64,000 nucleotides of DNA from Octopus sinensis (GCF_006345805.1 NC_043007.1:57784001-57848000); one strand, 5' to 3'; shown: positions 3,342 through 54,258, counted from the first letter of the stretch. Notes: generated by a model not told the origin, from the sequence alone. A program made the numbers and translations.

Positions 3342-3433
3342 ATATTTCTATCTACTCAAGTGAGATTTTGCAAGAAACCAATCGAAATTGAAAAATATTT
3401 TCCTTCACAAACAAGCCAGAAAAGCTATTGAAA

Positions 3434-9990: not shown

Positions 9991-10066
9991 CCACTAGGCC
10001 ACTTGAATACGAGGTAAATTTGAAAATAACTTTTTTTTTAAATTAGCTTTATATATTTGAATAGTA

Positions 10067-10112
<46 letters not shown>

Positions 10113-10257
10113 TATATATATATAATATATATACACATACAAATAGATAGGTAGCTAGAGAGATAGATATAACGATAGAAATAGAGAGAGAGAGAGTTTG
10201 CATACATATATGTGTAGTAGATATATGTCAATACACACATACACATATGTGTGTATG

Positions 10258-10288
<31 letters not shown>

Positions 10289-11022: not shown

Positions 11023-11410
11023 AGGCGGCGAGCTGGCAGAATATTTAGCACGCCGGGCTTAGCTGGCAGAATATTTAGCACGCCGGGCTTAGCGGTATTT
11101 CGTCCGTCCTTTCGTTTTGAGTTCAAATTAATTCCGCTGAGGTCCACTTTGCCTTTCTTCCTTTCGAGGTCGATAAATCAAGTACCAGTGAATCAAGTAA
11201 CAGTGAAATACAGGGGTCGATGTAATCGTCTAGTCCCCTCCCTTAAAATTTCGGGCTTTGTACATGAGTTCAAATTCCGCCGAGATCGATTTTTACCTTT
11301 CATCCTTTCCGGGTCGATAAAAATAAGTACCAGTTGAGCAGTGAGATCGATGTAATCGACTCATCTCCTCACAAAAAAAAAAAAATGCTGTCCTTGTAGC
11401 AAAATTTTAA
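11023..11410 (+). mobile_element. tRNA-derived SINE, family 2, with internal duplications
   Basis: GGCGGCGAGCTGGCAGAA head (a 30-bp segment is duplicated), GAGTTCAAAT B-box, body GTCGATAAAATAAGTACCAG repeated twice. Homologs on the minus strand at 62955-63375. Confidence 0.75.
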
Positions 11411-11417
11411 ACCATTA

Positions 11418-11458
<41 letters not shown>

Positions 11459-11950
11459 GAGTGAGAGAGCAGTTCATGCCATCAAAGTGACACTGGGGTA
11501 AAATATACGAAGCCCAATATACTCATCATGACTACCCGTCTGATAAGGGTACACCAGGCACATGCATCACAACCATATGTGCGCGACATGGTGATCTCAT
11601 ATTAAGATAAACAGCACATGACCTTGCAGTTGAGGCCCAGTTAGAATTTTCTTCAGGTTGAGTAGCCCATCCCGCTCAAAGGTCCCTGAATAAGGGTTGT
11701 TTAAGGATGTTGAAAGAACCACCCATGTTTCCAGAGGTGAATTATTCAAACCCCAAAACATCCCTCTCAGCACATGGCTATGATGCTCCCCCACTACTTC
11801 TGCTCGTGATCAGAGATGCATATATCGTCAGCCACTAAGGGACATGCTCAACTGGTTAAGGTCAAACAACTGACAAGCAAATCTGTGGTATTGAGCAGAA
11901 TATTTGCTGTAGCCCATCTTTTCTTTTGAGCAGAATATTTGCTGTAGCCC
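11459..11950. repeat. Unclassified ~490-bp interspersed-repeat-like sequence embedded in (TTA)n
   Basis: Non-coding, bounded on both sides by (TTA)n, with a ~25-bp terminal duplication (GAGCAGAATATTTGCTGTAGCCC). Single copy in this window, so repeat status rests on recognition. Confidence 0.45.
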
Positions 11951-15147: not shown

Positions 15148-15494
15148 TTTTTTCCGCCTCAGCGAAAGGAGAGGTATTGTTTCAGTCACGTTTGTTTGTT
15201 TATTTGTTTATCCGTGGACAAAATATCTCAAGAAACGCTGGATGACACTTTCAGTGATGTTTGACCTTGTGACTGGCACGAACTGCTTAAATTTGGGGAC
15301 AAGGATTCTGGACTATTTTTCCGGTTGATTTACTTAATTTTCAAGAGAGGTCGGGTTCATTTTTAATATTCTCGTTTGTGAAAGCAATTGAGTTTATTTA
15401 AGATATTCTCATTTTAAAAATCATATTTGGCTAATCATTAAGAGGACGTTGGTGTTGCCTTGTTGGAATTTTGCGCTCTCTGAATGCTCTTGTT
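15148..15494 (+). mobile_element. Helentron-associated (HINE-like) non-autonomous element; empty target copy
   Basis: 5' palindrome/subTIR TTCCGCCTCAGCGAAAGGAGAGG, (TTTG)n, 3' hairpin GCGCTCTCTGAATGC and CTTGTT end. Contains one AGGACGTTGGTGTTG at 15443-15457. Colinear with the sequences flanking the array at 30531-36277. Confidence 0.7.
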
Positions 15495-15722
15495 ATTTTT
15501 ATAATTTGTATATATCTATTTTATTATAAATGCAAAACAACACCACGGAGTAATCGACGTAAGTTAAATGATAAACCGCGATAACTGAAACGCGATAAGT
15601 CAACAGCCATATGGGAAGGGATTACTGTATTCAGTTTTATTTCAAGATTTATTGTCAATAGGGAAAGAGTCAGTTTCTAGCCTAGACCTAAGGCTCCTTG
15701 TTTGGAATTTCGACATCAAAAA

Positions 15723-17630: not shown

Positions 17631-19572
17631 AACGGGAAGCTTACGAAAATAAACAAAAGACGAAGGCAGGTGGAGTACAAACAAACAATTGTATTAGTAT
17701 GGCGCTCAGGAATAGAAATAAAACAAGTCTTTTACGTTTCGAGCCCACGCTCTTCAACAGAAAGATACACAGAAAAGAAACACCGAGAGAAACAAGGAGA
17801 GAAACAAGGAGAGAAAAAAATGCGTGCAGGAGCTAACGATTTAACATGGCGGTCTGATTTCGGCCAGAAGTCAGAGATCAGACGTTAGACGCAAGAGGGA
17901 TAGTAGGGGAGATAACAAGGTCAAATGACCTCGCCCCAACATAAGGGTGCGTTTGTGTATGAGAGACTATGTATGTGCGTATGAAAGGTCTGGACGTGTG
18001 TATGTATGTATGATGTGATGTGTAATGTCGTATGGTGTAGTGTAGTGTCGTATGGTGTAGTGTGGTGGGAGGTGGGGAAAGCCCATGTGGGGTGTGGGTT
18101 CGGCTGGGGGTTGGGGGAGAGTGGGGGTTGTGGGGAGAGTGAAAGAGGGAAAGAAGAGAGAGGGAGGAGTGGAGGAGGGAAGAGAGATGAGGGGGAGAGG
18201 AGATGAGGGGGAGAGGGGATGAAGAGGGAGGAGAGATGAAGGGGAGGGGAGAGATGAGATGAGATGAGGGGGTGGGGGGAAAGAAGGAAGGAGAGGATAG
18301 GGAAGGGAAGGGGAGGGTGAGAGGGGGAAGGAAGGAGAGGAGAAGAGGAGGGGAGAGGAGAGGAAAGGATAGAAGGGGAAATGATGGGAGGGGGAGGGGG
18401 AGAGAAGAGGAGTGAGGGAGCAGAGAGAAAGAGCGAAGAGGAAGAGGGATGAAGAAAGAGGAAAGAAGAGGAGGGAAAGAGAGTAGAGGCGAAAAGATGA
18501 AGGACTGAAGAGAAGTAGGAGTCGGGGGAGGTTAGATGATAGGGGGGAGGTTAGATGAGAATGGGGGGAGAGTTGAGACCGAATGGCGTGAAAGAGCGAA
18601 GAGAGAAGATTAATTCTTGTTCGCGGCGCAAACGGGGATCCGGATGGCCTCTGTGCAAGGACAATCCGAACACAGACAGGTGTTGCAAGGAGTGACCGGT
18701 GGAGCGGAAATGGCGTGAGACCGGTGTGTCGTTGGCAAGGCGGATGTCACGGAGGTGATCCGCGAGCCGGTCAGCCAAGCGGCGTCCCGTTTGTCCGATG
18801 TATAGGGAATGGCAGAGAGAGCAGGAGATGCAATAGATGATATTGCTGGAGGTGCAGGTGAAGGAGTTGATGATGCGATAGGGTCGATGATGGGTGCCAG
18901 TGAGGAGGGTGGTGTTGGAGAGGTAAGGGCAAGTGCAGCAACGTGGGCGGGAGCAGGGGAACGAGCCAGGTTGGGAGGTAGGGTCAGGGAAGGAGCTGTG
19001 GACCAAGAGGTCTCGTAGGTTATGGGCTCGTTTGAAGGAAGTGAGGGGTCGGTTAGGGAAGAGGTGTGAAGTGTGGACGGGTCGAACTGGAGATGCCGGA
19101 AAGCTCGAAGAATGGTGCATTGGAGAGGTAGGGTCGTGGGGTGGTAAGTGGGGGGAAAAGGGAGGCGGGAGACTACAGGGCGGGTTCGGGGGGAGAGAGT
19201 AGATGCACGGTCTACGGAACGTGCTCTGGCAAGGGCGGTGTGGATAGTGGTGAGGGGGTATCCACGTAAGATGAAGTGGCGAGCCATGAGTTGAGACTGA
19301 GTCTCAAAGTCATGGTCGTCACTACAGAGCCTACGTAGACGGAGGAATTGGGAATGGAAAGCTTGGTGTGTTTGGGGTGGGAGGAAGAGAAGTTTAGGTA
19401 TGAGTGTGAGTCTGTGTGTTTGTAGTGAATGGAGGTGGTAAGAGTGGAGTGATGAATGCTGACCGAAATGTCGAGGAAGGAGACAGAGGTGTTGGAGATA
19501 GTGGAGGTGAAGTGGAGGGCAGGATGGAAGGATTGAACGAAAGAGAGGAAGGAATCTAGATGTTGGGAGAGT
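17631..19572 (-). mobile_element. Penelope-like element (Neptune-like), 5'-truncated: RT thumb, GIY-YIG endonuclease, polypyrimidine tract, HHR tail
   Basis: SQFLRLRRLCSDD thumb. CSRPRCCTC linker. TCTSSNIIYCISCSLCHSLYIGQTGRRLADR..H and RLRREQELIF..GLN (ORF 18551-19120). HHR at 17728-17765. Confidence 0.9.
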
Positions 19573-19898
19573 TACATTTTTGTGTATGTGTGTGCGTGTG
19601 AATATATGTATGTACGTATGTTTATGACGTATCTGTCGTAATCCAGACAACTGTTTTAGCCGCTACGGCAAAGCCCTCCCACTCCAATTGATACGCTGAA
19701 AGAAGCTACTTATCATTTTCGTGACACTAAGTTTTTTTCGTAAGATTTAATGCAGAAGACAATTCATCGTTACATTTTTCTTTTTTTAATCATAGTTTGA
19801 ACAACTGAAATTCTCTCTTACCATGATTACACCAACCTTCAATGTACTAAATATTAGCTGTAGATGATAAAGAAATGTCGGAGATTCATATTATCATA

Positions 19899-20099
19899 CG
19901 AGGGGGGCGCTAAAAAGTTCCTAGCTTTGGATTAAATAAAGAAATACAGGACGATCAGTTAATTGTTATTTTATTCAATATATTCCCCTCTCACATTCAC
20001 GCACTTATATCGCAGCGGTCAAAAGAACTCAGAAGGTTGGGCCTCCAACCAGGTCTGTCGCGATATCCTTAAAGCCGGGAACTTTTCAGCATCCCCTCG
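19899..20099. mobile_element. Mariner-derived MITE with TA target duplication
   Basis: TA|CGAGGGGGGCGCTAAAAAGTTCC ... GGAACTTTTCAGCATCCCCTCG|TA. Confidence 0.85.
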
Positions 20100-24365: not shown

Positions 24366-26649
24366 TCATTTATATGAGTAGAAAGTGTGTTTCTGCCAGT
24401 GTTTACATTTGCATGATTTTTCTATGAGTGTGTTTACTAGGAGAACCTTAGAGAAAAGAATATGGAAGAGTTCAGAGTTACAAATGTTACAAAATCTCCT
24501 GCCCTTATCAAAAGGAAAGGATACAGACAGTATGAACCAATCTAACTTGAAAATTATATTGTTGTCTTTTAGACGCCAAACTAATTTACTTAGCCCTGTA
24601 CTATGTCGTTTTTTACTATCCCTGAATGTTGAATAGTGGTTTGAAATTCTCTTGGATAACTGGGAAGTGGACGCTCCTATATAGAAGAAGACATCGGTGC
24701 CGGAAGAAATTCTACACTGGTAAATAGGATTCTTAATCTTAGAATTACTAGACAAAAACTTTATTCTGTTGGGGTTGTCCTCCGACATCGAAACGAAGTT
24801 TTTATTGTTATGATTGTTGTTAATATTATTATTAGCGCTAACAACTACACTATTTCTATTATCATTAGTATTATTAATGGTATTACAACCAGTAATACCA
24901 CCGACAATAATACCGTTATTGTTGTTACCATCAACACTACCATTGTTATTAACACGACTAATACTATTATTAATATTATCATTGTTAACACTTTCGCTGC
25001 TACTAATGCTGTTACTATTAATACTATTCCTATTATTATGATTGTATGGTGGGTTGGAATTAGCAAAATTAGTGTTGGAACTCCCGGGTGAAAAATCTTT
25101 TTAGCAGCTTGGTATTGTGGGAAGATGTAATTTGTGAAAGATTCCTAGTGTTAGAGAAAGCGATTCTGACCTTGTGGGAATTGATAATAGAATGATATCT
25201 AGAATTTCTGGGAAAGTTCCTAGCAACGGCTTCACGGAACTGTAAGGGAAGGTTCGATTTAATTTGTTTTCCGAAAGGTATTACGAACCAGATACAGTTT
25301 TTTGTGGCCTTTGAATTGTTCTTAGTGTTATTTGTGATAGTAAGGGGAAAATTTCTGGGTTGGAAATTCGGGGTTGCATAGCGCTTACCTCCCTTAGTCC
25401 GTAAAGAATTTATTTTATGTACAGGGTTGCTGGTACTATTTGAATTGAAATCATTATTCCTATTACGAGTAACTTTACTATCTGGAGAAGCAGATGTTGG
25501 TTTAGAATGAGCTGAGTCGATGTATGACACTTTCTCCTTATAACCGGCTCTTAACAAGGCGGCGTTATAGAAGTCTGCCTTTTGGTTAAATATGTCGACA
25601 TTAGCAGATAATTTGGACAGTCTCAGAGATATGTTTTTAACTAAATTATCGATAATTGGCCTAGCATGATTACTGAAAATGCTGATATACTTAAGATTTG
25701 TGGAATGTTTATGATAAGGGAAGTATGAGTTATTCTGCAAATTGAGGGTAATGTCTAAGAAGTTGGCTTTAGTTAATTCATCGTCAAAAACTATGCGCAA
25801 GCCCATTCTACTAAAAAACCTAACTAATGTGTTAACCTTCTGTATTTTTTGGTTCGAAACGTTTTGGAGGTAAAGCAGACAATCGTCGCGATAAAGACCT
25901 CCACAGATGTCCGGGAATTGGTCGGCCATTTCATAAAGAATATAAATTCCGGCCAAATCGGCTATCTGGGCGCTATCTGTACTTCCCATTAGTACATCAA
26001 ACGCATTAGGGGTATCTCTACGGACCCACAACTTGCTATCGAACTGGATGAAAGATTTCCTAGCAGTCAATATTACACTAATTTCCTCCCTGGGGAGGCC
26101 TGCCTTATTGTGTGCGTGCCATAGGGCCTTATTAAATATAATGGGGTTGATTGAAGAATAGAAACTAGATATATCGAATTGGATGAATTTAGTGTTGGCC
26201 TTATCAGTAATAGAAGTAAACCAATCTACGACTTGAACAGAATTGGACCATAAGCTAAGTTTTAATTTATTAATTAATATAGGGATATACTTATCTAATA
26301 TGTATTTACTAAGGGTACCGATATCTGAACTGGAAGAGCATATGAGCCGCAATGCTGGGTTAGTATGAAAGTTCTGTTTGTGGTCCTTTAAGATGAATCT
26401 GGTTTGCCTAGGGTTTAATGGTTCCGTCTTCATCTGTAATCCGTAAGTCTCCATAATCTGCTTAGTTTCTAAGTTGGCCTGCCTGAGAGTATTCCTACTG
26501 GTGGTCCTGTAATTCTTATGTATCTCCTTTTCGAGCAGTTCTAAATAATGTCTCTTGGTAAGCTTATTGATGTTGCCGGTTTTATCCGATTGGACCAGGA
26601 TAGAATCTAAGCTGTTTATATCTCTAGAGACGTTATCGAGGTATCTGAG
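24366..26649 (-). pseudogene. PLE RT plus GIY-YIG ORF, 5'-truncated, one 2-nt deletion near 25100
   Basis: Open in frame from 26649 (SDKTGNINK..Y). RT motifs LKDHK, FDISSFY, MGSTDSAQIADL, LYRDD, FLDITL. EN motifs IYQC..YIGAS..KRISNH..CNICNSE..LVN..CKCKH. Left arm reads CTAAAAAGATT where the right arm reads CTAAACAAAGATT. Confidence 0.85.
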
Positions 26650-27462
26650 GTGAAGGTCAGAATCACTTTCTCTAACACTAGGAATCTTTCACAAATTATA
26701 TCTTCCCACAATACCAAGCTGCTAAACAAAGATTCTTCACCCGGGAGTTCCAACACTAATCTTGCTAATTCCAACCCATCATACAATCATAATAATAGGA
26801 ATAGTATTAATAGTAACAGCATTAGTAGCAGCGAAAGTGTTAACAATGATAATATTAATAATAGTATTAGTCGTGTTAATAACAATGGTAGTGTTGATGG
26901 TAACAACAATAACGGTATTATTGTCGGTGGTATTACTGGTTGTAATACCATTAATAATACTAATAATAATAGAAATAGTGTAGTTGTTAGCGCTAACAAT
27001 AATATTAACAACAATCATAACAATAAAAACTTCGTTTCGATCTCGGAGGACAACCCCAACAGAATAAAAGTTTTGTCTAGTAATTCTAAGATTAAGAATT
27101 CTATTTACCAGTGTAGAATTTCTTCCGGTACCGATGTCTTCTTCTATATAGGAGCGTCCACTTCCCAGTTATCCAAGAGAATTTCAAACCACTATTCAAC
27201 ATTCAGGGATAGTAAAAAACGACATAGTACAGGGCTAAGTAAATTAGTTTGGCGTCTAAAAGACAACAATATAATTTTCAAGTTAGATTGGTTCATACTG
27301 TCTGTATCCTTTCCTTTTGATAAGGGCAGGAGATTTTGTAACATTTGTAACTCTGAACTCTTCCATATTCTTTTCTCTAAGGTTCTCCTAGTAAACACAC
27401 TCATAGAAAAATCATGCAAATGTAAACACTGGCAGAAACACACTTTCTACTCATATAAATGA
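26650..27462 (+). pseudogene. Inverted duplicate of the PLE linker and GIY-YIG endonuclease (open frame, no RT)
   Basis: 270-aa ORF homologous to the left-arm C-terminus; preserves the undisrupted frame. Confidence 0.85.
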
Positions 27463-29909: not shown

Positions 29910-30315
29910 CTTTTACTCTTTTACTCTTTTACTTGTTTCAGTCATTTGACTGCGGCCATGCTGGAGCACCGCCTTTAGTCGAGCAAATCGTCCCCGGGAC
30001 TTATTCTTTGTAAGCCCAGTACTTATTCTATCGGTCTCTTTTGCCGAACCGCTAAGTGACGGGGACGTAAACACACCAGCATCGGTTGTCAAGCAATGCT
30101 AGCGGGACAAACACAGACACACAAACATATACACGCACATACATATATATACATATATACGACGGGCTTCTTTCAGTTTCCGTCTACCAAATCCACTCAC
30201 AAGGCTTTGGTCGGCCCGAGGCTATAGTAGAAGACACTTGCCCAAGGTGCCACGCAGTGGGACTGAACCCGGAACCATGTGGTTGGTAAACAAGCTACTT
30301 ACCACACAGCCACGC
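29910..30315 (-). mobile_element. SINE family 1, near full-length, well preserved
   Basis: Head GTGGCTGTGTGGTAAG..GGTTCAGTCC, full body and (AAAAGAGT)n tail. Partial copies also at ~23560-23862, 40745-40925 and 56724-56890. Confidence 0.85.
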
Positions 30316-30355
30316 GATGGATAATTGTCAGCTCACTACAGTAATAATAACACCT

Positions 30356-30386
<31 letters not shown>

Positions 30387-30567
30387 AAGAAGAAGAAGAA
30401 GAAGAAGAAGAAGAAGAAGAAGAAGAAGAAGAAGAAGAAGAAGAAGAAGAAAAAGAAGAAGATTAAAGATAGTAATGATAATAACTATAATGGTAATAAC
30501 AAAGGCAATAATTATAATCATAACAATAATAACAAGAGCACTCAGAGAGCGCATACCTTCGCCAAGG

Positions 30568-30582
30568 CAACACCAACGTCCT
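30568..30582 (-). repeat. 15-bp direct repeat / target-site duplication 1 (AGGACGTTGGTGTTG)
   Basis: Plus strand CAACACCAACGTCCT; identical to the empty-site 15-mer at 15443-15457. Confidence 0.9.
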
Positions 30583-32400
30583 GATTTCTTTTATTAGGCA
30601 CTAGGCCTCTATAAAGATGGGACAATACAAAAACAGACAAAACAATACAATGGGGTACATAGAAACACATATCGAATGAAATTATGGATACAATGAAAAA
30701 AACGAGGATGGAACGGCTTACCTGCCCCCCCCCCCACCCCAAGCAGGTAGTTTCGTTTTACTGTTTTTAAATAAAGTTTTACTTAACATTTAAACATCCT
30801 TCTTGCATCTGTTGGTTTTCTTTTTATTTAAAAAAAATCACTATTTACACCATATATTCTGATATATCTTCGAATGCCACCACCGGTGCCAACTCATCGT
30901 AACGAAACTACCATTGTCACATCTATCCTTTCCTCAAGCAACTCCTTCAATCTTTCTCCTCTTTCTCTTTCCAGCAGGACAGCTTTCATACTTTCATTGT
31001 CCTCCTTGGGCGCCAATTTATTCCTAAATATGTTCTTCATCTTTGCAATCTTTTTTTCTATCTCTACACTTTTTGTGTATTATATCATATGTCTTAGATT
31101 TTTCCCTTTCGGTGTCACTCTCTGTTTTCTTTCACCAATCTCTTCTTCTGTATCTCTGTATGTCTCTCATTCTCTCTTTCATTTTCCTTTTTCTTCTGTA
31201 CTCTCTCCTGCTTGCTAGATGATGGTAACGGTCTCTGCATTCGCTCCTCACTTATATTTGTTGACCTTTCATTTTTTCTCTGCTCGTTCGTTTTTTTATG
31301 TTTTCCACTCTGCATCTCCTCTCCACTTGCCTTTCTTTTCTTCCTAGGACTCTTTGGTGGTGGATCTGTGTTATTTCCTCTTTACCACTGTATACTGTTC
31401 TTCCATTTTTCCTCCTCTACGGTTAAACCCTCTTCTTCATGATGTTCCTTCTCTAACTCCACCTCTTCGTGTTTCTGACGACACTTAGCTTTCATGTAAC
31501 CCCTTATTCTACATAGATAGCATACAGGAAGCCTTCCTTCCACCACAATTTTCAACCTCGTCTCATCCGGTAGTACCACTTCTTCTGCAATTTTGTGGAG
31601 GTCTGGTAAGCTTATGTGAACCGATACCTCCAGTCCATATCCCCACAGTTCACCTCCGTAGTTCTTGTGGCCTTCAATATTTGGGTGTCGTCCTCTGTAT
31701 TATAGAGGATGGCTTCCACCAGTTACGCCTCATCAATTTCTGGGGACACTCTACCAATCCTTACTGTGGCCACACGTTTGCCACAGTAAGTTAGTAGTAG
31801 CACCCACTCAGTTGATCTCAAAGGCACAGTTGATCTCAAAGTTTTATTGCTTCTTCCTCACTCACGAAGCGTACCTTCATTGTGCCGTATTTCTTTCCTC
31901 TAATGTAGAATGTCGTTAGGTCTTTAACTTCTTTTAAGAATTCTTCAATCGCCTCCACTGCTGCTATTTCCACTTTTTTTGTTGTAAGGAATAGCGTTCT
32001 ATATATAGTTGTTTTTGTTTTTTGTTTTTTTCTTCTATGGCTTCCTTAGGCGGAGTCAGCCTTAGGCTTTCTCCTTCCTTTCTCAATAATTCGTTATACT
32101 TCTTGAAATTAGTTTCGTTTAGTTCAATTTCTCTAACTTGCGGTATATCTGCTGTTAGACTCTTGCCAGTTACTGCAGCGTAACTGTCTGCTGCTGCTGA
32201 TTTACTTTCCATAATATTATCCACAACTTCACCCATAAATGGGGAAGAAAATAAAATTCAGACAACTATAAATCCAATAAATCCAACAATTCAGTAATAT
32301 AACAGTTTAACAATAACAATGTAACAATGACAAAACTCACATGGACCGAACACACCTCAAACGCAGCAGGTAATCAAATGACTCGATACAACGCTAACGA
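30583..32400 (-). mobile_element. ORF1-only L1/Tx1-like element, unit A (decayed)
   Basis: Starts TCGTTAG; ATG 32236 (MGEVV..SYAAVTGK); RRM-like region; zinc knuckle CYLCRIRGYMKAKC; K/E-rich tract; G-run 3'UTR; ends AATAAAAGAAATC. No APE or RT. Confidence 0.8.
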
Positions 32401-32415
32401 CAACACCAACGTCCT
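32401..32415 (-). repeat. 15-bp direct repeat 2
   Basis: CAACACCAACGTCCT, identical to repeat 1. Confidence 0.9.
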
Positions 32416-33712
32416 TATTTCTTTATATGGATATAATGAAAATGAGAATGAAATGGACTACCCCACCCCCCAAAAAAGCAGATAGTTCCATTTTGCTGTT
32501 TTTAAATGAACAGTTCATATCGGTCTTGTATCTGTTGGCTTATAACATATACTCTATTAAATCTTCGAAGGCCACCACCGGCGGCAATTCGTCGTAGCCA
32601 ATGTGTATTCCTGTCATCTGTATTCGTTCGCCAAACAACTCCTTCAGTTTCTCTCCTCTTTCTTTTTCCACCAAAAACAGCTTTCTTCCTCGGACTTTTA
32701 AGTGGTGAGCCTGTCTTCTTTCATTTTACCACCGTGTATCACTCCTCTAATATCGCTTCCTTCACGGTTGCACCCTCTTCTTCCTGGTATTCCTTCCCTG
32801 TCTCTTCCTCTTCGTGTTTCTGGGAACACTCAGCTTTCATGTGACCCCTTACTCCACAAAGAAAACATATAGGTGGTCTTCCTCCTACCACTATTCTCAA
32901 CCTTGCTTCGTCCGGCAGTTCTTCCGCAATCTTGTGGAGGTCTGGCAAGCTTATATGGACCAATACCTCTTGTCCATACCCTCATCAGTTCACCTCCATA
33001 GTCCTTGATATTTTTATTATCTTCGTGTCTTCCTCTGTGTCTACGAGAATGGCTGCCACCAGCCACGCCTCATCAATTTCTGGGGTAACTCTACCTATTC
33101 TTACTCTGGCCTCACGATTGCCACAGTAAGTCAGTAGTGGTGCCCACTCTGCTGATCTCAAAGTTACAGTGGAGTATTTTCTCGCTTCTTCTTCATTCAC
33201 GAAGCGTACCTCCACTGTGCCGTATTTCCTTCTTCTGGTGTAGAACATCGTTACGTTCTTAATTTCTTTGAGGCACTCCTCGACCGCCTCCACCGCTGCT
33301 TTTTCCACCTTTTTGTTACAATTTCCAATGTTCTATACACAATTGTTACCTTCTTCGTTCTTTCTGTTACTTCTTGGGGAGGGGGGCGTCACCCTCAGGC
33401 TATCTCTCTCCCTTTTCAATAAATCATTGAATTAAAAAAAAATTTTCTCCTGTAATTTAATTTCTGTAACCTACAGTCCCTCCGCTGACAGGCTTTTGCC
33501 AGTCACCGCAGCAGAACTGCCCGCTTGCACTGGTATTCTTTCCCAATTCTTCACAACTTCACCCATAAATGAGGAAAAAAATTAAAAAACGGTAACAACA
33601 CGTTCAACAGGTAACAATCAATCAACAATTCAATAAATAACAGTTAAACAAAAACGGTACTCACAAGGTGCGTATACACTTCCAAATCACTAATCAAACA
33701 AAACACTAACGA
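32416..33712 (-). mobile_element. ORF1-only L1/Tx1-like element, unit B (internally deleted)
   Basis: Starts TCGTTAG; ATG 33566; VEVRFVNEEEARKYS; intact CCHC knuckle CFLCGVRGHMKAEC; ends ATAAAGAAATA. Confidence 0.8.
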
Positions 33713-33727
33713 CAACAGCAACGTCCT
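33713..33727 (-). repeat. 15-bp direct repeat 3 (1 mismatch)
   Basis: CAACAGCAACGTCCT. Confidence 0.85.
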
Positions 33728-35438
33728 TATTTCTTTAATTAGGCACAAGGCTTCATAGAGAAGGAACAATACAAAAGACAGACAAAACGATACATTGGGA
33801 TACATAAAACATATAAACGAATGAATTATGAATATAAATGAAAATGAAGATAGAATGACTTACTTGCCCTCCCCCCACCAATAAGCAAGCAGTTTCATTT
33901 TACTTTTTTTAAATAAAGTGTGTACTTATCAGTCTTGCATCTTGTTAGTTTTCCTTTTGTTTAAAAATCCACACTAAGTCACACCATATGTTTCATCGAA
34001 TCGTCAAATATTACCACTGGTGGCAATTCATCGTAACGAAGTCGAATTCCTGTTATCACTATCCTGTCGCCAAATATTTCCTGCAACCTTCTTGCTCTTT
34101 CTTCCTCCAACAGCACCGCTTTCTCATCTCGATTTCCGTCACTGTTATCCACTTTAACCCTTATTACATGCTTCATTTTTGGAATTTTATTTTCTATCTC
34201 TACACTTATTTTGTAACTTATATTTCTCCCATATTTCCCCTTTGGTGGCTCTCTCTGCTGTACCTCATCACTCTCTTCCTCTGTTGCTGGTATTCCCGAC
34301 TCCTTTTTACTTTCATTTCTCCTCTTCTTCCGTCCTCCCTCCTCCTTACTAGTTGAAGGCAACGGTCTTTGTTTTCGTTCCTCAATTGGCTCCTCATTCC
34401 TTCTTTTCTCGTTCTTGTTCTCCTCTGCCTTTCTTTTCTTCTTCGGGCTTTTAGGTGGAGATTCAACATTGCTCCTCTTTCTTTCTACTATTGTATATTT
34501 TTCCACCATTTCATCCTCCGCTGTTGCGCCCTCTTCTTCCTAACACTCCTTCTCCGCCTCCTTCTGTTCATGTTTCTGGGGACACTTTGCTTTCATTTGT
34601 CCTCTTACTCCATATAAATAACATACCAGAGGTCTCCCTTCCACCACGATTCTTAATCTTGTCTCATCTGGTAGCACCAGCTCTTCCGAAATTTTGTGGA
34701 GGTCAGGCAGGCTGATATGGACCGACACCTCCAGTCCATATCCCCTGCAGTTCACCTCCTTAGTTCTTGATATCTTCAATACATGAGTGTCTTCCTCTGT
34801 GTTATTGGGGATGGCTGCCACCAATTTCTGGGGGCACTCTACTTATTCTTACTCTGGCCGCACGTTTGCCACAGAAGTAGGTAGCAGTAACCACTCGGCT
34901 GATCTCAAAGGCACATTGGAGTATTTCCTCGCTTCTTCTTTGCTTACGAAGCGTACCTCCACTGTGTCGTATTTCTTTCCTCTGGTGTAATATGTCGTTA
35001 TATCCTTTATCTCTACCGCTTCCTCCGCTGCTACTTCAATTTTTTTCGTTACCACATTCAACATTCTATAAATACTTGTCCTTTTAGTTTTTTCAAGTAT
35101 TTCTTTAGGAGGCGTCAACCTCAGGCTGTTCCCCTCCTTCAGCAAACTATTATATTTTTTAAAATTCTCCTTTAATTCGATTTCTTGGACCTGCAGTACT
35201 TCTACTGACAGGCCTTTGCCAGTCACCGTAGCGTAACTGCCCTCTGGTCTACTTTCTATGACGGTATTATTTATAACTTCAGCCATAAATGGGAAGAAAA
35301 AATAAAAGCCAAGTCAGTTAACAACAATTTCAACAATTCCAGTTAATAACAGTTCAACAATTCAGTAAATTAACGATACAATACAACAAAACTCACATGG
35401 AGCTCGGAATCAAATGATTCGAAAAATAACACTAACGA
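33728..35438 (-). mobile_element. ORF1-only L1/Tx1-like element, unit C (most complete ORF1)
   Basis: Starts TCGTTAG; ATG 35286; ORF1 pieces 35286-34849, 34824-34540 and 34509-33979, ending IFGDRIVITGIRLRYDELPPVVIFDD..MV*; ~250-bp 3'UTR ending ATTAAAGAAATA. Confidence 0.82.
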
Positions 35439-35453
35439 CAACGCCGACGTCCT
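35439..35453 (-). repeat. 15-bp direct repeat 4 (2 mismatches)
   Basis: CAACGCCGACGTCCT; followed directly by host HINE sequence CTCAACGATTAGCC. Confidence 0.85.
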
Positions 35454-36276
35454 CTCAACGATTAGCCAGAGATGATTTTTAAAATGAGAATATCTGAAAT
35501 AAACTCGACTGCTCTCACAAACGAGAATACTAAAAATGAACCCGACCTCGCTTGAAGATTAAGTAAGAAAAACGGAAAACTAATCCAGAATCCTTGTTCG
35601 GTCCTGATCGATCCCAATGGTAGTCATGGAATGTGAAGGTGGATGTGCGGGCCGTGTTTGTAATGTTGTATGTGTGTCGTCTGCAGTCGGAACAGGGACA
35701 GTTTTCTCTATGAAGACCTTTTTAACTCTATCCACTGACATAGTGTCTTTACGACCATTAAGGTCTATAGTGAAAAATTATGCGTGCGTGAAAGAAAGCG
35801 GAAAGGACCTGCATACGGTGCTGTTAATAGAGGTTAAACATCGCTGGCGCACAAAAACGTGAGTCTCAGAAGTAAAGCTCGAAATGCAATTGTCAAGTAA
35901 GTATGAGGTTTTAAACAGGGGCGGTATATTATCCATCAGCTTCTACTAAGATAGAGACGCGAGTAAAATAATAATAGAGAAATGAATATAAAACTTTGGA
36001 AACAGCAACGCCACCAAAACTTACGTGGAAACCATGAGCGTGCTTTCGAGGGAGATAATCAGAGAATAACTTGAAAGTTAACGTAAGATTGTAATACTTC
36101 ATGTAAACTAAATATAACAAATGATTCAGAATCCTTGTCCAGTACCGGATCGATCCCAAAATCTAATCAGTTCGTGCCAGTCACGAGGCCAAACATCTCT
36201 GAAAGTTTCATCCAAATCCACGGACAAAACAAACACGACTGAAAACAATACCTCCACCTTTGCTAAGGCGGAGGTG

Positions 36277-36352
<76 letters not shown>

Positions 36353-36604
36353 CTTGACCGAGTTGTCAATACAGTCCAGGAAATATGCACTAAGAGCAAG
36401 GATAACCGGGCAATTAACAACTAAACTACCAATCGGCAACAACACAAATAAAAATGAAGATAAAAATAAAAACAAAAACTTTTTACTCAAACCCCAAACT
36501 AATTATGGGGACAGGAAGGGAAAAACAGGAATAAACGTGACGTAACATAATAGATTACATAATCTTCAATTACATAATAGATACTAATATAAGTACAAAA
36601 TTAT

Positions 36605-37770
36605 TCATCAGGCTGAGTAAAAAGTAAGCAACGTTTTGAAACATGAAATTCATCACAACGTATTTCAACAATGCGGAAATTTTATTCATCAAAGTAAGTA
36701 CCATTACAATCAACACATTTTTGCCAACGAATTTGTTTATTCCGGTAACATAAGAATCTGGAGTTCTGGTGCTGATGGACTCTTTGAACGCACTTCCAGC
36801 ATCCGTTTGATTTTTGAACTCATTCTCTCGCAGGAAACCATCAAGGTGCTTGAAAAAGTCGTAATCAATGGGAGACAGGTCTGGGCAGGGAAGAACTTCG
36901 TAGCGAAGTTCCCTTAACTTCTGGAGCGTCATTAGTGAAACGTGTGGTCGAGCATTGTCATGAAGAATGATTGGCCCCAATCTGGGATGGAGGAGTAGCA
37001 GTTTTTCGTTCATTTTGGTAATTTCATAGCAATATGTTTTCTGCAGTAATGGTTTTTCCTGGTTTTCAGAAATTATAGAGGATGAGTCCAGCAGTACACC
37101 ACCAAACTGTCACCATAACCTTTTTGAAGAGCTTGGATTTTAAGAAGGTTTTCGGTGCTTCATTTTGGTCCAACCAAACGTTTTTTATTATTGTACAGAA
37201 TCCACTTTTCATGGCAAGTTACAATACGGTCGAGAAATGGATTGGTCTGTTTCCGAAGAAGAAACGACGAGCAAATTTCGTATCTGCACATTTTCTGATT
37301 TTCATTCAAATTGAGTTTCCGATCGCATGCATATGGTTGCAGGCAGTTTTCAGGCTAGCTTGAAGTTCTTTTGCCAGGTCTCGAGTGGTTTTATGTGGAT
37401 CATTCTCAATGACGGTCTTTAATTGACCGTCATCGATGACAGATTGGCGTCCATTACTTTCATGATCTTCAAGACTCAGGTTTCCACTGCAAAATCGTTT
37501 AAACCATTTTCAAGGTGACCACTCACTGGTCATTTCTTCACCAAACGCTTTGTTGATATGCTTCACGTCCATTTTTGAAGTTGAATAACAAAATTGCTCA
37601 AATATCGCGCTTTGACAGTTCCATTTCTGATTAATGTAACAACGATGAAAAAATATCAATGTTAGTTTTTTTATGCATTTGGGCAAGTCTATGTCTGTAT
37701 TATCTGACAATTGCTAAAAATTGTTTTTAAACAATTCAAAACACTACAAAAGTCCGGTTTATTTTTCTTC
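36605..37770 (-). mobile_element. Degenerate mariner (DD34D) element
   Basis: ORF 36570-37013 with GPIILHDNARPH and PDLSPIDYDFFKHLD; upstream WDQNEAPK and CNE.W-like remnants. Confidence 0.85.
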
Positions 37771-51301: not shown

Positions 51302-54258
51302 AACGGAAGCTTTATGAAAATAAACAAAGACGAAGGCAAGGTGGAAGACAAACAACAATTGTATTAGTATGGCGCTCAGGAAATATAAATAAAACAAGTC
51401 TTTAACGTTTCGAGCCTACGCTCTTCACAGAAAGATACACAGAGAGAGAAAAAACACAGAAAGAAGGAGAGAAAAAAATGCGTGCAGTAGCTAACGAATC
51501 AACATGGCGATCTGATTTCGGCCAGAGGTCAAAGATCAACATGAACGAACGAGAGCGAAATAAGGGGAGATAATAGGGTTGATAAAAGGGTTGAGTGACC
51601 AGCTAAAAGTGCGTGGGAGGGGTCTGGATGTGTGTATTTATAGGTTGGTGTATGTATTAGTATGTATACGGGTGTGTGGTGTGTGTGGTGTGTGTGTGTG
51701 TGTGTGTGTGTATTAGAGAGTATTTTGCGTAAGATTGGTCTGGACGTGCGTATTGTATGGGGTTGGTGTATGTATTAGTATGTATTAGTATGTATTAGTA
51801 CGTATTGGTATGTATAGGTGTGTGTGTGTGTGTGTGAGAGAGTATAAGTGCGTATGCGGGGTCTGGACGTGTGTATGTTATAGGGTTGGTGTAAGTATTA
51901 GTATGTCTAGTATGTATTAGTACGTATTAGTATGTATTAGTTGGTGTGTGTATTAGTATGGCACATATATGTGAGTGTGATGTGTAAAGTCATGTGGTGT
52001 AGTGAGGAGAAGAGGGGAGAGAAGGGGAGGGGAGAAGAGGGGGAGAAGGGGAGGGAAGAAGAGGGGGAGGAGAAGGGGGAAGAGGAGACGATGGGGGGAA
52101 GGAAGGTGAGGAGGGGGATGAAGGAGGAAAGAGGGCGAGGGGAGAGAGAGAAGGGAGAGAGGGGAGTGAGGGAGCAGAGGGAAGGGCAAGAGGGAGGAGA
52201 AAGAGGGAAAAGGGAAGGGGGAGTAGGGGTGAAAGGATGAAGGACTGAAGAAGTAGGCGGTCGGGAGAAAGGATAGGTGAGGAGGGGAGAGGGGGGTTAG
52301 ATGAGGAGGGGGGGAGAGTTGAGACCAAATGGCGTATAAGAGCGAAGAGAGAAGATTAATTCCTGTTCACGCGCAAACGGAATTCCGGATGGCCTCTGTG
52401 TAAGGACAAACCGAACACAGATAGGTGTTGCAAGGAGTGACCGTGGAGCGAAAATGGCGTGAGACCGGTGTGTCGTTCCGCAAGGTGGATGTCACGAAGG
52501 TGTTCCGCGAACCGGTCAGCCAAGCGGCGTCCCGTTTGTCCGATGTACAAGGAATTGCAGAGAGAGCAAGAGATGCAATAGATATATTGCTGGAGGTGCA
52601 GGTGAAGGGAGGGATGATGGGATAGGGTCGATAGTGGGTGCTAGTGGGCGGGTGGTGTTGAGGAGTAAGGGCAAGTGCGGCAACGTGGGCGGGGCAGGGG
52701 AACGAGCCGGGGTTGGGAGGTAGGGTCAGGGAAGGAGCTATGGACCAAAAGGTCTCGAAGGTTTGTGGGCTCGTTTGAAAGAGGGGAGGGGGTCGGGTTA
52801 GGGAAGAGGTGGTGAAGTGGACGGGTCGGACTGGAGATGACGGAAAGCTCGAAGAATGGGCGTTTGAGACGTAGGGTCGTGGGGTGGTAAGTGAGGGAAA
52901 AGGGAGGCGGGAGACTACAGGGCGGGTTCGGGGAGAGAGAGCAGATACACGGTCCACGGACCGGCTCTGGCAATGGGCGGTGGTGATGTGGTTGAGGGGG
53001 TATCCACGTAGGTGAAGTGGTGAGCCATACGTTGAGACTGAGTCTCAAAGTCATGGTCGTCACTACAGAGCCTACGTAGACGGAGGAATTGGGAATAGGG
53101 GATGGAAAGCTTGTTGTGGTTTTGGGTGGGAGGAAGAGAAGTTGAAGGTATGAGTGTGAGTCTGTGTGTTTGTAGTGAATGGAGGTGGTAAGAGTGGAGT
53201 GAAGAATGCTAACCGAAATGTCGAGGAGGAGACAGAGGTGTTGGAGATAGTGGAAGTGAAGTGGAGGGCTGGATGGAAGATTGGACGAAAGAGAGGAAGG
53301 AATCTAGATGTTCGCGGGAGAGTGAGGTGGCACCGATAATGTCGTCAATATACGACCATATAGTTCAGGAGTGGGACCCAGTGAAATTAGAGAATATTTG
53401 GGCCTCAACATAGCCAACGAACAGGTTCGCATAGTTGGGGCCCATTCGCGTTCCCATGGCCACTCCCGAGACCTGATGGTAGAACTCGCCCCGCGAACGA
53501 GAAGCAGTTCAGAGTAAGGACAATTCGGCCAGACAATGAGTGTGGAGGTGTCAGGTACAGGGTTAGAGCGGAGGTCAAGAAAGTGTCGAAGGGCCTGCAG
53601 TCCTTCGTGGTGAGGGATAACAGTATAGGAGGCTTTGGATGTCCATAGTAAAAAGGATTTTGGAGGAGCCGGAGAAAGGAGAAAGATTGAAAAGCCGGAG
53701 AGCATGGTTGGTATCGTGGATGTGGGAGGGAAGAGATTGCCAACTAGGGGGGCAAGGACACGGTCGAGGTATTTAGAGATGAGCTCCGTGGGGCAGTTAA
53801 CAGCAGACGATGGGGCGGCCAGGTTGTTGGTTTGTGGATTTTGGGGAGGAAGTAAATGGTGGGGGTACGTGGTTTCGCACAATTAGGTTGGATGCGGTGC
53901 GGGGGAGACGGAGGACGAGTTGAGGTCTTGGACAGTAGAGGATACCGTCTGTTGGTAGCTACGTGTGGGGTTAGATGGCAGAGGGGAATAGAAGGAGGTG
54001 TCATTGAGTTGGCGGAAAGCTCGGCCCTATAGAGGTCCGCGCGCCACACACCTACAGCTCCACCCTGTCAGCCGGTTTGATTATGTCAGCGCGCCGCTGG
54101 AGGGAAAGAAGAGCAAGAGCTCAGCCGAGGAGATGTTGAGGCGGCGTTGGCGCCTGGAGAAGTTGAACCGCTCCAATGCACGCTGACAAGCGCCGCGAAA
54201 AGATCCCCTGCTAGGATCGGCCAGGGGCAGGCGTCCACGGGATGGTCGGCGGCCCATA
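51302..54258 (-). mobile_element. Penelope-like element (Neptune-like), longer copy with RT core, many indels
   Basis: IYFLPKIHKP, MDIQSLYTVIPHHEGL, GVAMGTRMGPNYANLFVGYVE, YIDD, thumb and GIY-YIG motifs spread across frames. Colinear with 17631-19572; HHR-like motif at 51399-51435. Confidence 0.9.

What the first reader, a model, noticed from the sequence alone, without database searches (positions are those of the whole stretch)
30568..35453. Stack of three site-specific retroelements separated by a regenerated 15-bp target, with the empty site visible in the same window
Seen: four copies of AGGACGT(T/C)G(G/C)(T/C)GTTG (30568, 32401, 33713, 35439) delimit three 1.3-1.8-kb units. All three units begin TCGTTAG and end near ATAAAGAAAT. 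Removing the array rejoins a host repeat that exists uninterrupted at 15148-15494 with one 15-mer (15443-15457). Known: Tx1-clade elements are often sequence-specific (Xenopus Tx1L inserts into the Tx1D transposon). Inferred: target-primed insertion duplicates the 15-mer, so each insertion recreates a target and the locus accumulates successive subfamilies in order. I do not know of a described Tx1-like family that targets a Helentron HINE.
Basis: partly seen in the sequence, partly recalled or inferred. Interest (0 to 1): 0.92.

Follow-up and report, generated by a model that had tools for sequence, protein, structure and literature searches.

The report
Stacked site-specific retroelement insertions in octopus
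Three old, very different copies of a small gag-only mobile element sit head to tail at exactly the same 15-base site inside another octopus repeat, each insertion having re-created the site; it is a clean example of a behaviour already described in crocodilians and frogs, not a new kind of system.

Summary
Four copies of AGGACGTYGSYGTTG, all on the minus strand, bound three units of 1711, 1297 and 1818 bp. A fifth copy lies in an uninterrupted paralogue of the host repeat at 15443-15457.

The units are only 70-73% identical. Their differences carry the mark of purifying selection on one gag/ORF1-like reading frame (dN/dS 0.24-0.34). They therefore diverged as active lineages and inserted independently; this is not a local duplication.

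No unit encodes a reverse transcriptase or an endonuclease. Relatives are known only from octopods. In Octopus vulgaris, the one intact relative is a 1.7-kb, one-ORF element with the same 3' tail; it and a second, rearranged copy carry target-site duplications of 10 and about 16-18 bp at unrelated sites. The 15-mer is thus a target-site duplication, and the family behaves like a non-autonomous, HAL1-like LINE derivative.

Best reading (about 0.7): successive target-primed insertions, made by a site-specific partner LINE that was not found, into a 15-bp site next to the 3' hairpins of a HINE-like repeat.

"Tx1 clade" is untested and "HINE" is only partly supported. Genome-wide specificity could not be tested because no octopus genome could be searched. 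A direct precedent exists: SINEU-3 and Tx1-Mar in Mariner-N4_AMi, with tandem copies sandwiching a TSD. This is a new member of a known kind, of moderate interest.

The parts
35439..35453 (-). 15-mer copy X1 (AGGACGTCGGCGTTG), continuous with the upstream part of the host repeat; 5' duplication of unit U3
33728..35438 (-). Unit U3, 1711 bp. Starts TCGTTAGTGTT and ends TTAAAGAAATA. ORF remnant 35286-33979 (about 440 codons) with one in-frame stop and one short frameshift/deletion patch.
33713..33727 (-). 15-mer copy X2 (AGGACGTTGCTGTTG) between U3 and U2
32416..33712 (-). Unit U2, 1297 bp. It has the same termini, six in-frame stops, and lacks about 500 bp of the C-terminal linker and part of the 3' UTR. 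It carries an intact CCHC zinc knuckle (PF00098, 22.2 bits against a cut-off of 20.8) at about 32820-32870.
32401..32415 (-). 15-mer copy X3 (AGGACGTTGGTGTTG) between U2 and U1
30583..32400 (-). Unit U1, 1818 bp. Starts TCGTTAGCGTT and ends AAAAGAAATC. ORF remnant 32236-30845 with three stops and at least five frameshifts.
30568..30582 (-). 15-mer copy X4 (AGGACGTTGGTGTTG), continuous with the downstream end of the host repeat
30525..30567 (-). 3' end of the host (HINE-like) repeat. It holds two hairpins, CCTTGGCGAAGG and GCGCTCTCTGAGTGC, followed by TCTTGTTATT.
35454..35615 (-). Host repeat, the part immediately upstream of the target site
35616..36153 (-). Second insert of about 520-540 bp in the host repeat (boundaries approximate), unrelated to the units. 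It is flanked by an imperfect direct repeat of about 37 bp and is absent from the empty copy.
36154..36285 (-). 5' part of the host repeat, with the 5' palindrome ACCTCCGCCTTAGCAAAGGTGGAGGT
15148..15500 (+). Uninterrupted paralogue of the host repeat (the 'empty site'), with a single 15-mer at 15443-15457

Best explanation
The locus records three separate, successive insertions of a non-autonomous non-LTR retroelement into one 15-bp site, AGGACGTYGGYGTTG. The site lies about 45 bp from the 3' end of a short interspersed repeat with HINE-like ends.

The element is about 1.7-1.8 kb. It has a 5' UTR, one gag/ORF1-like ORF of about 440 codons with a single CCHC knuckle, and a conserved 3' tail ...GCCTTGTGCCTAAT(T/A)AAAGAAAT without poly(A). 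It has no reverse transcriptase or endonuclease. It is an ORF1-only element in the manner of mammalian HAL1.

Shown:
- The three copies are deeply diverged lineages that evolved under selection on the ORF before they landed here.
- They share exact ends.
- Each is bracketed by the same 15-mer.
- A paralogous repeat shows the unoccupied site.
- The one complete relative examined in O. vulgaris is a discrete one-ORF element with the same tail, and both copies there carry target-site duplications of variable length at other sites.

Inferred:
- The elements move by target-primed reverse transcription, using the RT and endonuclease of a partner LINE supplied in trans.
- That endonuclease nicks the two strands 15 bp apart at fixed positions of this sequence. 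Fill-in then duplicates the 15-mer and leaves a usable target on each side of the new copy.
- Later insertions therefore stack head to tail.
- The 15-mer variants are explained most simply by the order U3, then U2, then U1, each going into the 3'-most copy, which keeps the intact downstream repeat sequence.
- A polyadenylation-type signal (AATAAA or ATTAAA) sits 6-8 nt before the element's end. This would put the RNA 3' end inside the downstream 15-mer. Transcripts from occupied sites could then pair with a nicked empty target and start reverse transcription exactly at the element's end. That would explain the missing poly(A).
- Among the LINE groups reported as recently active in Octopus, L1-Tx1 is the most likely partner. 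This is a guess by elimination.
For: Same site, same ends:
- Four exact 15-mers where none is expected by chance.
- The junction motif GTTGTCGTTAGYGTT occurs only at the three 5' junctions.
- The joined flanks match the empty copy at 86.6%.

Independent origin of the units:
- Pairwise nucleotide identity is 70-73%.
- dN/dS is 0.24-0.34, and third codon positions differ at 0.35-0.51 against 0.15-0.36 for first and second positions.
- Private changes on each of the three branches have N/S of 0.5-0.9. I estimate the neutral expectation at about 2.5-3; this was not computed.
- Copies at other loci (O. bimaculoides P0003-P0006, P0103) are as similar to each unit as the units are to each other in matched regions: 65-80% against 69-81%.
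- The two host-repeat copies differ by only 13.4%. That is too little for the units to have reached 27-30% divergence in place.

Discrete mobile element that makes target-site duplications:
- L003 (O. vulgaris OX597833.1) 9916-11652 is a 1737-bp element with an intact 379-aa ORF (P0044). It has a perfect 10-bp duplication GCTGGGTTCG and the tail GGAGGCCTTGTGCCTATAATAAAGAGAAAT.
- A second, rearranged copy in L004 has flanks CCGKTGATTGTYACAC.
- No similarity between unit and host beyond the 15-mer.
- By eye, the two ends of a unit are not inverted copies of each other.

Gag/ORF1-like coding content:
- zf-CCHC above the Pfam cut-off.
- 346 homologues were found. All those that carry a name come from Octopoda.
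- None of the 19 longer homologues scanned has an RT or endonuclease domain.

Precedent for the mechanism:
- Tandem SINEU-3 copies sandwiching a 16-bp TSD in Mariner-N4_AMi, mobilised by Tx1-Mar (PMC4494074).
- ORF1-only HAL1 (PMC5753468).

Hint of tandem units elsewhere: the P0005 gene model joins the C-terminal domain of one copy to the middle and C-terminus of another.
Against: - No reverse transcriptase, endonuclease or partner LINE was found, so 'retroelement' rests on the gag-like ORF, the duplications and analogy.
- The only relatives whose flanks could be read (L003, L004) are not at the 15-mer. Site specificity is therefore not a property of the whole family. For the window's lineages it rests on one locus (three hits out of three).
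- One of the two host-repeat copies in the window is empty.
- The duplications flanking U3 differ at 3 of 15 positions, although U3 has the least damaged ORF. Age estimates from the duplications and from ORF decay disagree, unless U1 and U2 were already defective when they inserted.
- There is no poly(A) tail, unlike SINEU/Tx1-Mar.
- The RRM-like fold of the ORF is not established: pLDDT 48-55 and no Foldseek match below E = 0.1.
Confidence: 0.7

Rival explanations
1. Local tandem duplication. One inserted unit was duplicated twice by unequal exchange, and the copies then decayed in place to 70% identity (a long-period satellite inside the host repeat).
For: Head-to-tail arrangement with a constant spacer. 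HINEs often carry internal tandem repeats.
Against: Divergence between units is under purifying selection (dN/dS 0.24-0.34) and so is each branch (N/S 0.5-0.9). Neutral decay in place would give a dN/dS near 1. The host repeat copies differ by only 13.4%. With about 15% change per lineage, the 15-mers and termini would be expected to carry about 18 changes in 120 nt, but 6 are seen (P about 0.001). Neighbouring units are no closer to each other than to copies at other loci.
Confidence: 0.03
2. Site-specific recombination instead of retrotransposition. The units are non-autonomous cargo integrated from circular intermediates by a tyrosine or serine recombinase supplied in trans (Crypton-like or integron-like). 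The 15-mer is the shared crossover core, which also yields n+1 cores for n units.
For: Exact ends in all three units, a repeat of the same length each time, no 5' truncation, no poly(A), and a tandem stack at one core.
Against: The relatives with the same ORF and 3' tail are flanked by unrelated duplications of 10 and about 16-18 bp at other sites, as staggered nicks would give. A fixed core would not vary like this. The elements carry no internal copy of the 15-mer. The coding content is gag/ORF1-like with a CCHC knuckle. No recombinase was seen in the 19 longer homologues scanned.
Confidence: 0.06
3. Independent insertions, but without a sequence-specific endonuclease. The first copy landed here by chance. 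Later copies were drawn to it by homology, through cDNA recombination or template switching with a resident copy, or through a local hot spot created by the element's A-rich 3' end. Alternatively, the stack was built at another locus and arrived as one read-through transcript, or by hitchhiking when the host repeat was copied.
For: The sister subfamily is not specific for this site. Only one occupied host copy could be examined. The possibility of hitchhiking had to be ruled out explicitly in the crocodilian precedent.
Against: Homology-driven events would replace or fuse copies rather than leave a complete 15-mer between complete units. Both nick positions are reproduced to the base three times, although one side of the context changes after the first insertion. 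The units' 5' ends resemble the target (9 of 10 bases; frequency 0.00066 among random 12-mers of the window), which suggests long association with this site. Hitchhiking only moves the question to the place where the stack was first built.
Confidence: 0.15

Closest known systems
SINEU-3 / Tx1-Mar in crocodilians, targeting the DNA transposon Mariner-N4_AMi (Kojima 2015, PMC4494074)
   Same: A non-autonomous retroposon, with its LINE partner, inserts at a fixed position of another interspersed transposon. The duplication is about 16 bp. [quoted passage not shown]
   Different: SINEU is short, non-coding, headed by snRNA sequence and ends in poly(A); its partner Tx1-Mar is identified. Here the element is 1.7-1.8 kb, encodes an ORF1-like protein, has no poly(A), and its partner is unknown. 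The target is a HINE-like repeat, not a mariner. The stack here has three units from lineages only 70% identical.
Tx1L in Tx1D (Xenopus) and other Tx1-clade target-specific LINEs (Keno, Kibi, Koshi, Mutsu, Dewa)
   Same: APE-type LINEs with sequence-specific insertion, including insertion into another transposon. Type I ORF1p variants (RRM plus CCHC) are typical of the L1/Tx1 group in non-mammalian animals (PMC5203782).
   Different: Membership is defined by RT/APE phylogeny, which cannot be applied because the units have no ORF2. No Tx1-type partner with the same tail was found.
HAL1 ('half-L1') of mammals
   Same: A non-autonomous LINE derivative that keeps only ORF1 and depends on a LINE's ORF2p in trans (PMC5753468). 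Here all five copies examined are ORF1-only, and the ORF evolved under purifying selection.
   Different: HAL1 derives from an identified L1 and inserts without site specificity. The octopod ORF has a CCHC knuckle and a conserved C-terminal domain that are not found in L1 type II ORF1p.
R1 elements of arthropod 28S rDNA
   Same: An APE-type site-specific LINE with a fixed duplication of similar length (14 bp, from my own knowledge). Read-through target sequence at the RNA 3' end helps exact initiation. This is the model I infer here.
   Different: R1 is autonomous and targets a host multicopy RNA gene. No RNA gene is present at this site: there are no Rfam or tRNA hits anywhere in the window.
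HINE / DINE-1-like non-autonomous Helentrons (Thomas et al. 2014, PMC4067079) - for the host repeat
   Same: A short non-coding interspersed repeat with a palindrome at the 5' end, a stem-loop about 10 nt from the 3' end, and T-rich boundaries.
   Different: The subterminal inverted repeat is weak (10 of 12 bases, p about 0.1). Only two copies were seen. No Helentron with the same ends is available.

Membership tests
Target-specific non-LTR retroposon (TPRT with target-site duplication) | Each copy is flanked by a direct duplication of host sequence that is single at an empty site | tested here: met
   Four 15-mers for three units; one 15-mer in the uninterrupted paralogue at 15443-15457
Target-specific non-LTR retroposon (TPRT with target-site duplication) | Most genomic copies lie at the same target sequence | not testable with these tools
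   No octopod genome could be searched. Within the window, 3 of 3 copies are at the site. The two copies of the sister subfamily in O. vulgaris are at other sites.
Target-specific non-LTR retroposon (TPRT with target-site duplication) | Encodes an RT and endonuclease, or shares its 3' tail with a LINE that does | tested here: not met
   No RT or endonuclease in the units or in the 19 longer homologues scanned. The tail motif occurs only in the units and in the L003/L004 relatives. Only about 108 kb of octopod DNA could be inspected for a partner, so its absence is not informative.
Tx1 clade of LINEs | RT/APE sequence groups with Tx1 in a phylogeny | not testable with these tools
   The units have no ORF2
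Tx1 clade of LINEs | Type I ORF1p: RRM plus CCHC knuckle | tested here: inconclusive
   CCHC is met (PF00098, 22.2 bits). The RRM is not shown: there is no Pfam hit, the AF2 models have pLDDT 48-55, and the best Foldseek matches are RRM domains but at E = 0.1 or worse.
Tx1 clade of LINEs | Poly(A) 3' tail, as in Tx1-mobilised SINEU | tested here: not met
   The units end ...AAAGAAAT(A/C) directly against the 15-mer; SINEU elements have poly(A)
HAL1-like ORF1-only non-autonomous LINE derivative | A complete element with defined ends holds an ORF1-type gene and no ORF2 | tested here: met
   U1, U2, U3 and the intact L003 element (1737 bp, 379-aa ORF, perfect TSD) all have this structure. The rearranged L004 copy has the matching 5' and 3' parts.
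HAL1-like ORF1-only non-autonomous LINE derivative | The ORF is maintained by selection across lineages | tested here: met
   dN/dS 0.24-0.34 between units and N/S 0.5-0.9 per branch. Both the N-terminal and the C-terminal domains are conserved in Octopus and Argonauta proteins.
HAL1-like ORF1-only non-autonomous LINE derivative | Derivation from an identified parent LINE (shared ORF1 and UTRs) | not testable with these tools
   No parent LINE sequence is available
HINE (non-autonomous Helentron) - host repeat | Subterminal inverted repeats of about 12-13 bp | tested here: inconclusive
   CCTTAGCAAAGG against CCTTCGCCAAGG, 10 of 12 bases. 10% of shuffles score as well. Absent from the more decayed empty copy.
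HINE (non-autonomous Helentron) - host repeat | [quoted passage not shown] | tested here: met
   5' ACCTCCGCCTT-AGCA-AAGGTGGAGGT (-18.7 kcal/mol). 3' GCGCTC-TCT-GAGTGC, 10 nt from the end, in the array copy; weaker in the empty copy.
HINE (non-autonomous Helentron) - host repeat | An autonomous Helentron with the same termini exists in the genome; insertion within TT | not testable with these tools
   Only two copies are available. Their boundaries are T-rich (TTTTTT|CCGCC and GTTATT|TTTA in the empty copy), but this is not diagnostic.
Local tandem repeat / satellite | Neighbouring units are each other's closest relatives and diverged neutrally in place | tested here: not met
Recombinase-mediated integrating element (Crypton-like) | The same crossover core flanks all members; a recombinase gene occurs in autonomous members | tested here: not met
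   Sister copies have unrelated flanking repeats of different length. No recombinase domain in the homologues scanned.

The most novel reading that the evidence does not exclude
An ORF1-only (gag-only) retroelement superfamily has been kept under purifying selection across Octopoda (Octopus and Argonauta). At least three of its deep sublineages share strict specificity for one 15-bp site beside the 3' hairpins of a Helentron-type repeat, and their 5' ends have come to mimic the target. That would be the first site-specific HAL1-like family and the first LINE-dependent element known to home to a rolling-circle transposon. Its stacks would serve as ordered fossil records of subfamily succession.
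Probability: 0.35. Interest if true: 0.6.

Novelty: new member of a known kind. Interest (0 to 1): 0.42.

Why it matters
If genome-wide counts confirm the specificity, this would extend TE-into-TE homing by LINE machinery to cephalopods and to a protein-coding, ORF1-only passenger. Homing of this kind is known from Xenopus Tx1 and from crocodilian Tx1-Mar/SINEU.

Stacks that regenerate their own target are natural layered records: the order of units gives relative ages of subfamilies without a molecular clock.

The family is also a practical issue for annotation. Several octopus 'CCHC-type domain-containing' gene models are fragments of these elements, and one appears to splice across two tandem units.

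It does not reveal a new mechanism.

Tried and rejected
1. Getting more genomic copies.
- A protein-pattern scan and a junction-pattern scan of JGI metagenomes, plus one scan of viral contigs, found no octopod DNA. The two junction hits (L001, L002) are GC-rich chance matches with no similarity to the units.
- Exact-protein look-ups failed for P0001, P0003-P0006, P0103 and three window ORFs.
- Only P0044, P0167 and P0014 gave loci. None holds the 15-mer or the host repeat.

2. Classifying the ORF.
- Pfam gives only zf-CCHC.
- A PDB sequence search gives only retroviral nucleocapsid knuckles at E above 0.3.
- Two AlphaFold runs gave pLDDT 47.7 and 55.4.
- Foldseek against the PDB gave nothing below E = 0.1, with weak RRM domains at the top. 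I do not use these as evidence.

3. I suspected that the unit ends were diverged copies of host sequence on either side of the 15-mer. Local alignment against shuffles showed nothing beyond one low-complexity match, so I rejected the idea.

4. A full-text search for the host repeat's 3' motif in papers returned only unrelated primer matches.

5. I looked for RT-bearing ORFs in the window that could be the partner. Pfam found only a C2H2 zinc-finger gene.

6. The first word-indexed protein search, with the full 440-aa query, was swamped by the K/E-rich linker and gave one hit. Using the N-terminal domain alone worked better.

Full report
OBSERVATION

The pattern AGGACGTYGSYGTTG occurs five times in the window and nowhere else, even when one mismatch is allowed. 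None is expected by chance. Four copies lie on the minus strand at 30568, 32401, 33713 and 35439. The fifth lies on the plus strand at 15443.

Read on the minus strand, the four copies bound three units: U3 (35438-33728, 1711 bp), U2 (33712-32416, 1297 bp) and U1 (32400-30583, 1818 bp). All three begin TCGTTAG(T/C)GTT and end (T/A)AAAGAAAT(A/C). The junction motif GTTGTCGTTAGYGTT occurs only at these three places.

Joining the array's flanks in a script gives a sequence that matches 15299-15500 at 86.6% over 202 bp, and a further 61 bp upstream at 88.5%. The alignment runs from a 5' palindrome to ...GCGCTCTCTGA(G/A)TGCTCTTGTTATT. One addition: the host copy at the array holds a second, unrelated insert of about 520-540 bp (roughly 35616-36153) that the empty copy lacks.

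WHAT THE UNITS ARE

The units are homologous along their whole length but only 70-73% identical. U2 lacks about 500 bp.

Each unit carries the remains of one reading frame of about 440 codons. It has an N-terminal helical part, an alpha/beta domain, a single CCHC zinc knuckle (PF00098 above the Pfam cut-off in U2), a K/E-rich linker, and a conserved C-terminal motif (...LRYDELPPVVIFDD...). ORF damage differs between units:
- U3: one stop and one frameshift patch.
- U2: six stops and the deletion.
- U1: three stops and at least five frameshifts.

No unit has a reverse transcriptase, an endonuclease, or any other recognisable enzyme. By eye, the two ends of a unit are not inverted copies of each other. 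No part of a unit resembles the host repeat beyond the 15-mer. The window has no Rfam or tRNA hit, so the target is not a known RNA gene.

Word-indexed protein searches found only Octopus bimaculoides and O. vulgaris proteins. An exhaustive phmmer search with the best of these (P0001) found 346 cluster representatives at E below 0.001. Those that carry names come from O. bimaculoides, O. sinensis, O. vulgaris and Argonauta hians. Nineteen of the longer ones were scanned against Pfam. They show zinc knuckles, or host domains fused in by gene prediction, but never an RT or an endonuclease.

LOCAL DUPLICATION OR INDEPENDENT INSERTIONS

Codon-by-codon comparison of the three ORF remnants gives dN/dS of 0.24-0.34. 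Third codon positions differ at 0.35-0.51, against 0.15-0.36 for first and second positions. Changes private to each of the three branches have a non-synonymous to synonymous ratio of 0.5-0.9. I estimate about 2.5-3 for neutral decay; that figure was not computed. Most of the divergence therefore arose while the ORF was functional, in separate active lineages, and not after the copies came to lie side by side.

Three further points agree:
- The two host-repeat copies differ by only 13.4%. This bounds the time available at this locus well below what 27-30% neutral divergence would need.
- The 15-mers and the unit termini carry 6 changes in 120 nt, where about 18 would be expected if they had decayed with the units (P about 0.001).
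- In matched regions, family members from other loci are as close to each unit (65-80%) as the units are to each other (69-81%).

I regard local duplication as refuted.

IS THE 15-MER A TARGET-SITE DUPLICATION

Two O. vulgaris loci could be fetched through proteins of the family.

In L003, a sister subfamily (about 32% amino-acid identity) forms a discrete 1737-bp element at 9916-11652. It has an intact 379-aa ORF and the tail ...GGAGGCCTTGTGCCTATAATAAAGAGAAAT, clearly homologous to the tails of U1 and U3. It is flanked by a perfect 10-bp direct repeat, GCTGGGTTCG.

In L004, a rearranged copy of the same subfamily is bordered by CCGKTGATTGTYACAC. The 5' part is inverted together with its flank.

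These loci show four things:
- (a) The one-ORF, 1.7-kb structure is the normal form of the family.
- (b) The family has exact ends.
- (c) It creates duplications of variable length (10 to about 18 bp) from whatever sequence it enters, as staggered nicks do. A fixed recombination core would not vary like this.
- (d) The sister subfamily does not use the 15-mer site.

By homology, the 15-mer at the array is a duplication of host sequence. The single copy at the empty site (15443-15457) fits this.

MECHANISM

Shown: three independent arrivals at one nucleotide position, each with the same 15-bp duplication and the same element ends.

Inferred: a partner LINE's endonuclease nicks the bottom strand at the 5' edge of the 15-mer and the top strand at its 3' edge. 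Target-primed reverse transcription and fill-in then duplicate the 15-mer. Each new copy is thus bracketed by two potential targets, and one of them keeps half of the original context.

Both nick positions are reproduced to the base in all three events, although one flank changes after the first insertion. Recognition must therefore lie mainly in the 15-mer plus one side.

The 15-mers read, from 5' to 3'..TCGGCG....TTGCTG....TTGGTG....TTGGTG... The array's host copy keeps CpGs that the empty copy has lost. The simplest history, with three substitutions, is as follows:
1. The ancestral site is the CpG form, and U3 inserts first.
2. The 3' copy of the 15-mer undergoes CpG decay.
3. U2 inserts into that 3' copy, and then U1 inserts into the new 3'-most copy.
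4. One later G-to-C change occurs in the second 15-mer.

This order conflicts with ORF damage, since U3 is the least damaged. The conflict disappears if U1 and U2 were already defective when mobilised in trans. I hold the order loosely.

All tails carry AATAAA or ATTAAA 6-8 nt before the end and have no poly(A). Cleavage would then fall in or past the downstream 15-mer. RNA from an occupied site could pair with a nicked empty site and start cDNA synthesis exactly at the element's end, as proposed for R1 and R2. This is an inference from established models and was not tested.

The units' 5' ends (T-CGTTAGTGTT) match positions 5-14 of the target (CGTTGGTGTT) at 9 of 10 bases. Only 0.066% of random 12-mers from the window do as well, and the sister subfamily shows nothing similar. 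This may reflect microhomology used to seal the 5' junction, or long co-evolution with the site.

COMPARISON WITH WHAT IS KNOWN

The behaviour has a direct precedent. In crocodilians, SINEU-3 and its partner Tx1-Mar insert at fixed positions of the DNA transposon Mariner-N4_AMi with a TSD of about 16 bp. [quoted passage not shown] Tx1 itself inserts into Tx1D.

ORF1-only LINE derivatives are known as HAL1 (PMC5753468).

ORF1 proteins that combine an RRM with a CCHC knuckle (type I) are typical of L1/Tx1-group elements in non-mammalian animals. However, Jockey-superfamily ORF1s can look similar (PMC5203782).

In O. vulgaris, the LINE groups with recent activity are RTE, Dong-R4, CR1, L1-Tx1, Hero and R2 (PMC13282606). 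L1-Tx1 is the natural suspect for a partner with an ORF1 of this type and an APE capable of specificity, but this is elimination and not evidence.

Membership in the Tx1 clade cannot be tested without an RT. The one accessory trait that can be checked, poly(A), is not met.

For the host repeat, two of the HINE hallmarks listed by Thomas et al. (PMC4067079) are present: a palindrome at the 5' end and a stem-loop near the 3' end. The subterminal inverted repeat is not significant, and no Helentron partner is available. 'HINE-like' is a fair label; 'HINE' is not established.

LIMITS

Site specificity rests on one occupied locus and one empty one. No octopod genome could be searched with the tools at hand.

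One indirect hint of further stacks exists. The O. bimaculoides gene model P0005 begins with a segment homologous to the C-terminal domain of the ORF (E = 1e-7). It then continues with the middle and C-terminus of a different copy, as if it had been spliced across two tandem units.

Structure prediction was too poor to support any fold assignment.

VERDICT

The clade assignment and the identity of the host repeat are unproven. The element is better described as an ORF1-only, HAL1-like non-autonomous retroelement of octopods.

It is a new member of a known kind of system. It is interesting as a tidy three-layer example and as the first such case in cephalopods, but it is not a surprise to a specialist. 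Interest is 0.42.

Noticed in passing
window 35428-35438, 33702-33712, 32390-32400 (unit 5' ends) versus the 15-mers: The first 11 nt of each unit (T-CGTTAGTGTT or T-CGTTAGCGTT) resemble positions 5-14 of the target 15-mer (CGTTGGTGTT) at 9 of 10 bases. Only 0.066% of random 12-mers from the window match as well. The sister subfamily in L003 shows no such resemblance to its own duplication.
   Followed up: partly
window about 35616-36153, with direct repeats at about 36120-36160 and 35580-35620 (minus strand): The host repeat at the array carries a second insert of about 520-540 bp. It is bracketed by an imperfect duplication of about 37 bp (TGGGATCGATC.GG.AC...ACAAGGATTCTG.AT) that is absent from the empty copy. 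It could be another insertion with a long duplication, or a junction between two copies of the repeat.
   Followed up: no
protein P0005 (O. bimaculoides A0A0L8GR87), not in the window: Its residues 7-47 are homologous to the C-terminal domain of the unit ORF (E = 1e-7). They are followed by the middle and C-terminus of another copy. The gene model probably spans two tandem units of different subfamilies at another locus.
   Followed up: partly
L004 9424-9441 and 9903-9920; element pieces 9441-9852 (minus) and 9921-10216 (plus): A copy of the P0044-type element in O. vulgaris is split. Its 5' part is inverted together with its flanking duplication, which leaves inverted copies of CCGKTGATTGTYACAC. 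This is either a twin-priming-like structure or a later inversion.
   Followed up: partly
window 24366-24788 (-), 25069-26454 (-), 26650-27462 (+): Two ORFs on opposite strands share the same 140-aa C-terminus, which includes a GIY-YIG-like motif (FFYIGASTSQLSKRISNHYS). They flank a 461-aa ORF. By my own recognition this looks like a Penelope-like element in inverted partial-dimer form. Pfam gave no hit.
   Followed up: partly
window about 18000-20000 and 52000-54000: Two blocks stand out from the AT-rich surroundings: GC 0.51-0.55 with strong GC skew (+0.55 to +0.57). They carry related ORFs that include a GIY-YIG-like motif (IYIGQTGRRLADRLADH).
   Followed up: no
window 3428-5458 (+): A long open reading frame encodes a C2H2 zinc-finger protein with at least five fingers (Pfam E = 6e-32). 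It is the only clear host gene seen in the window.
   Followed up: partly
window 30200-30320, 30357-30462 and 36570-37013: The array's host repeat is itself embedded in other repeats. A SINE-like segment and an (AAG)35 microsatellite lie just past its 3' end. On the 5' side there is a mariner-type transposase remnant (...HDNARPH...), which I recognised by eye; Pfam gave no hit.
   Followed up: no
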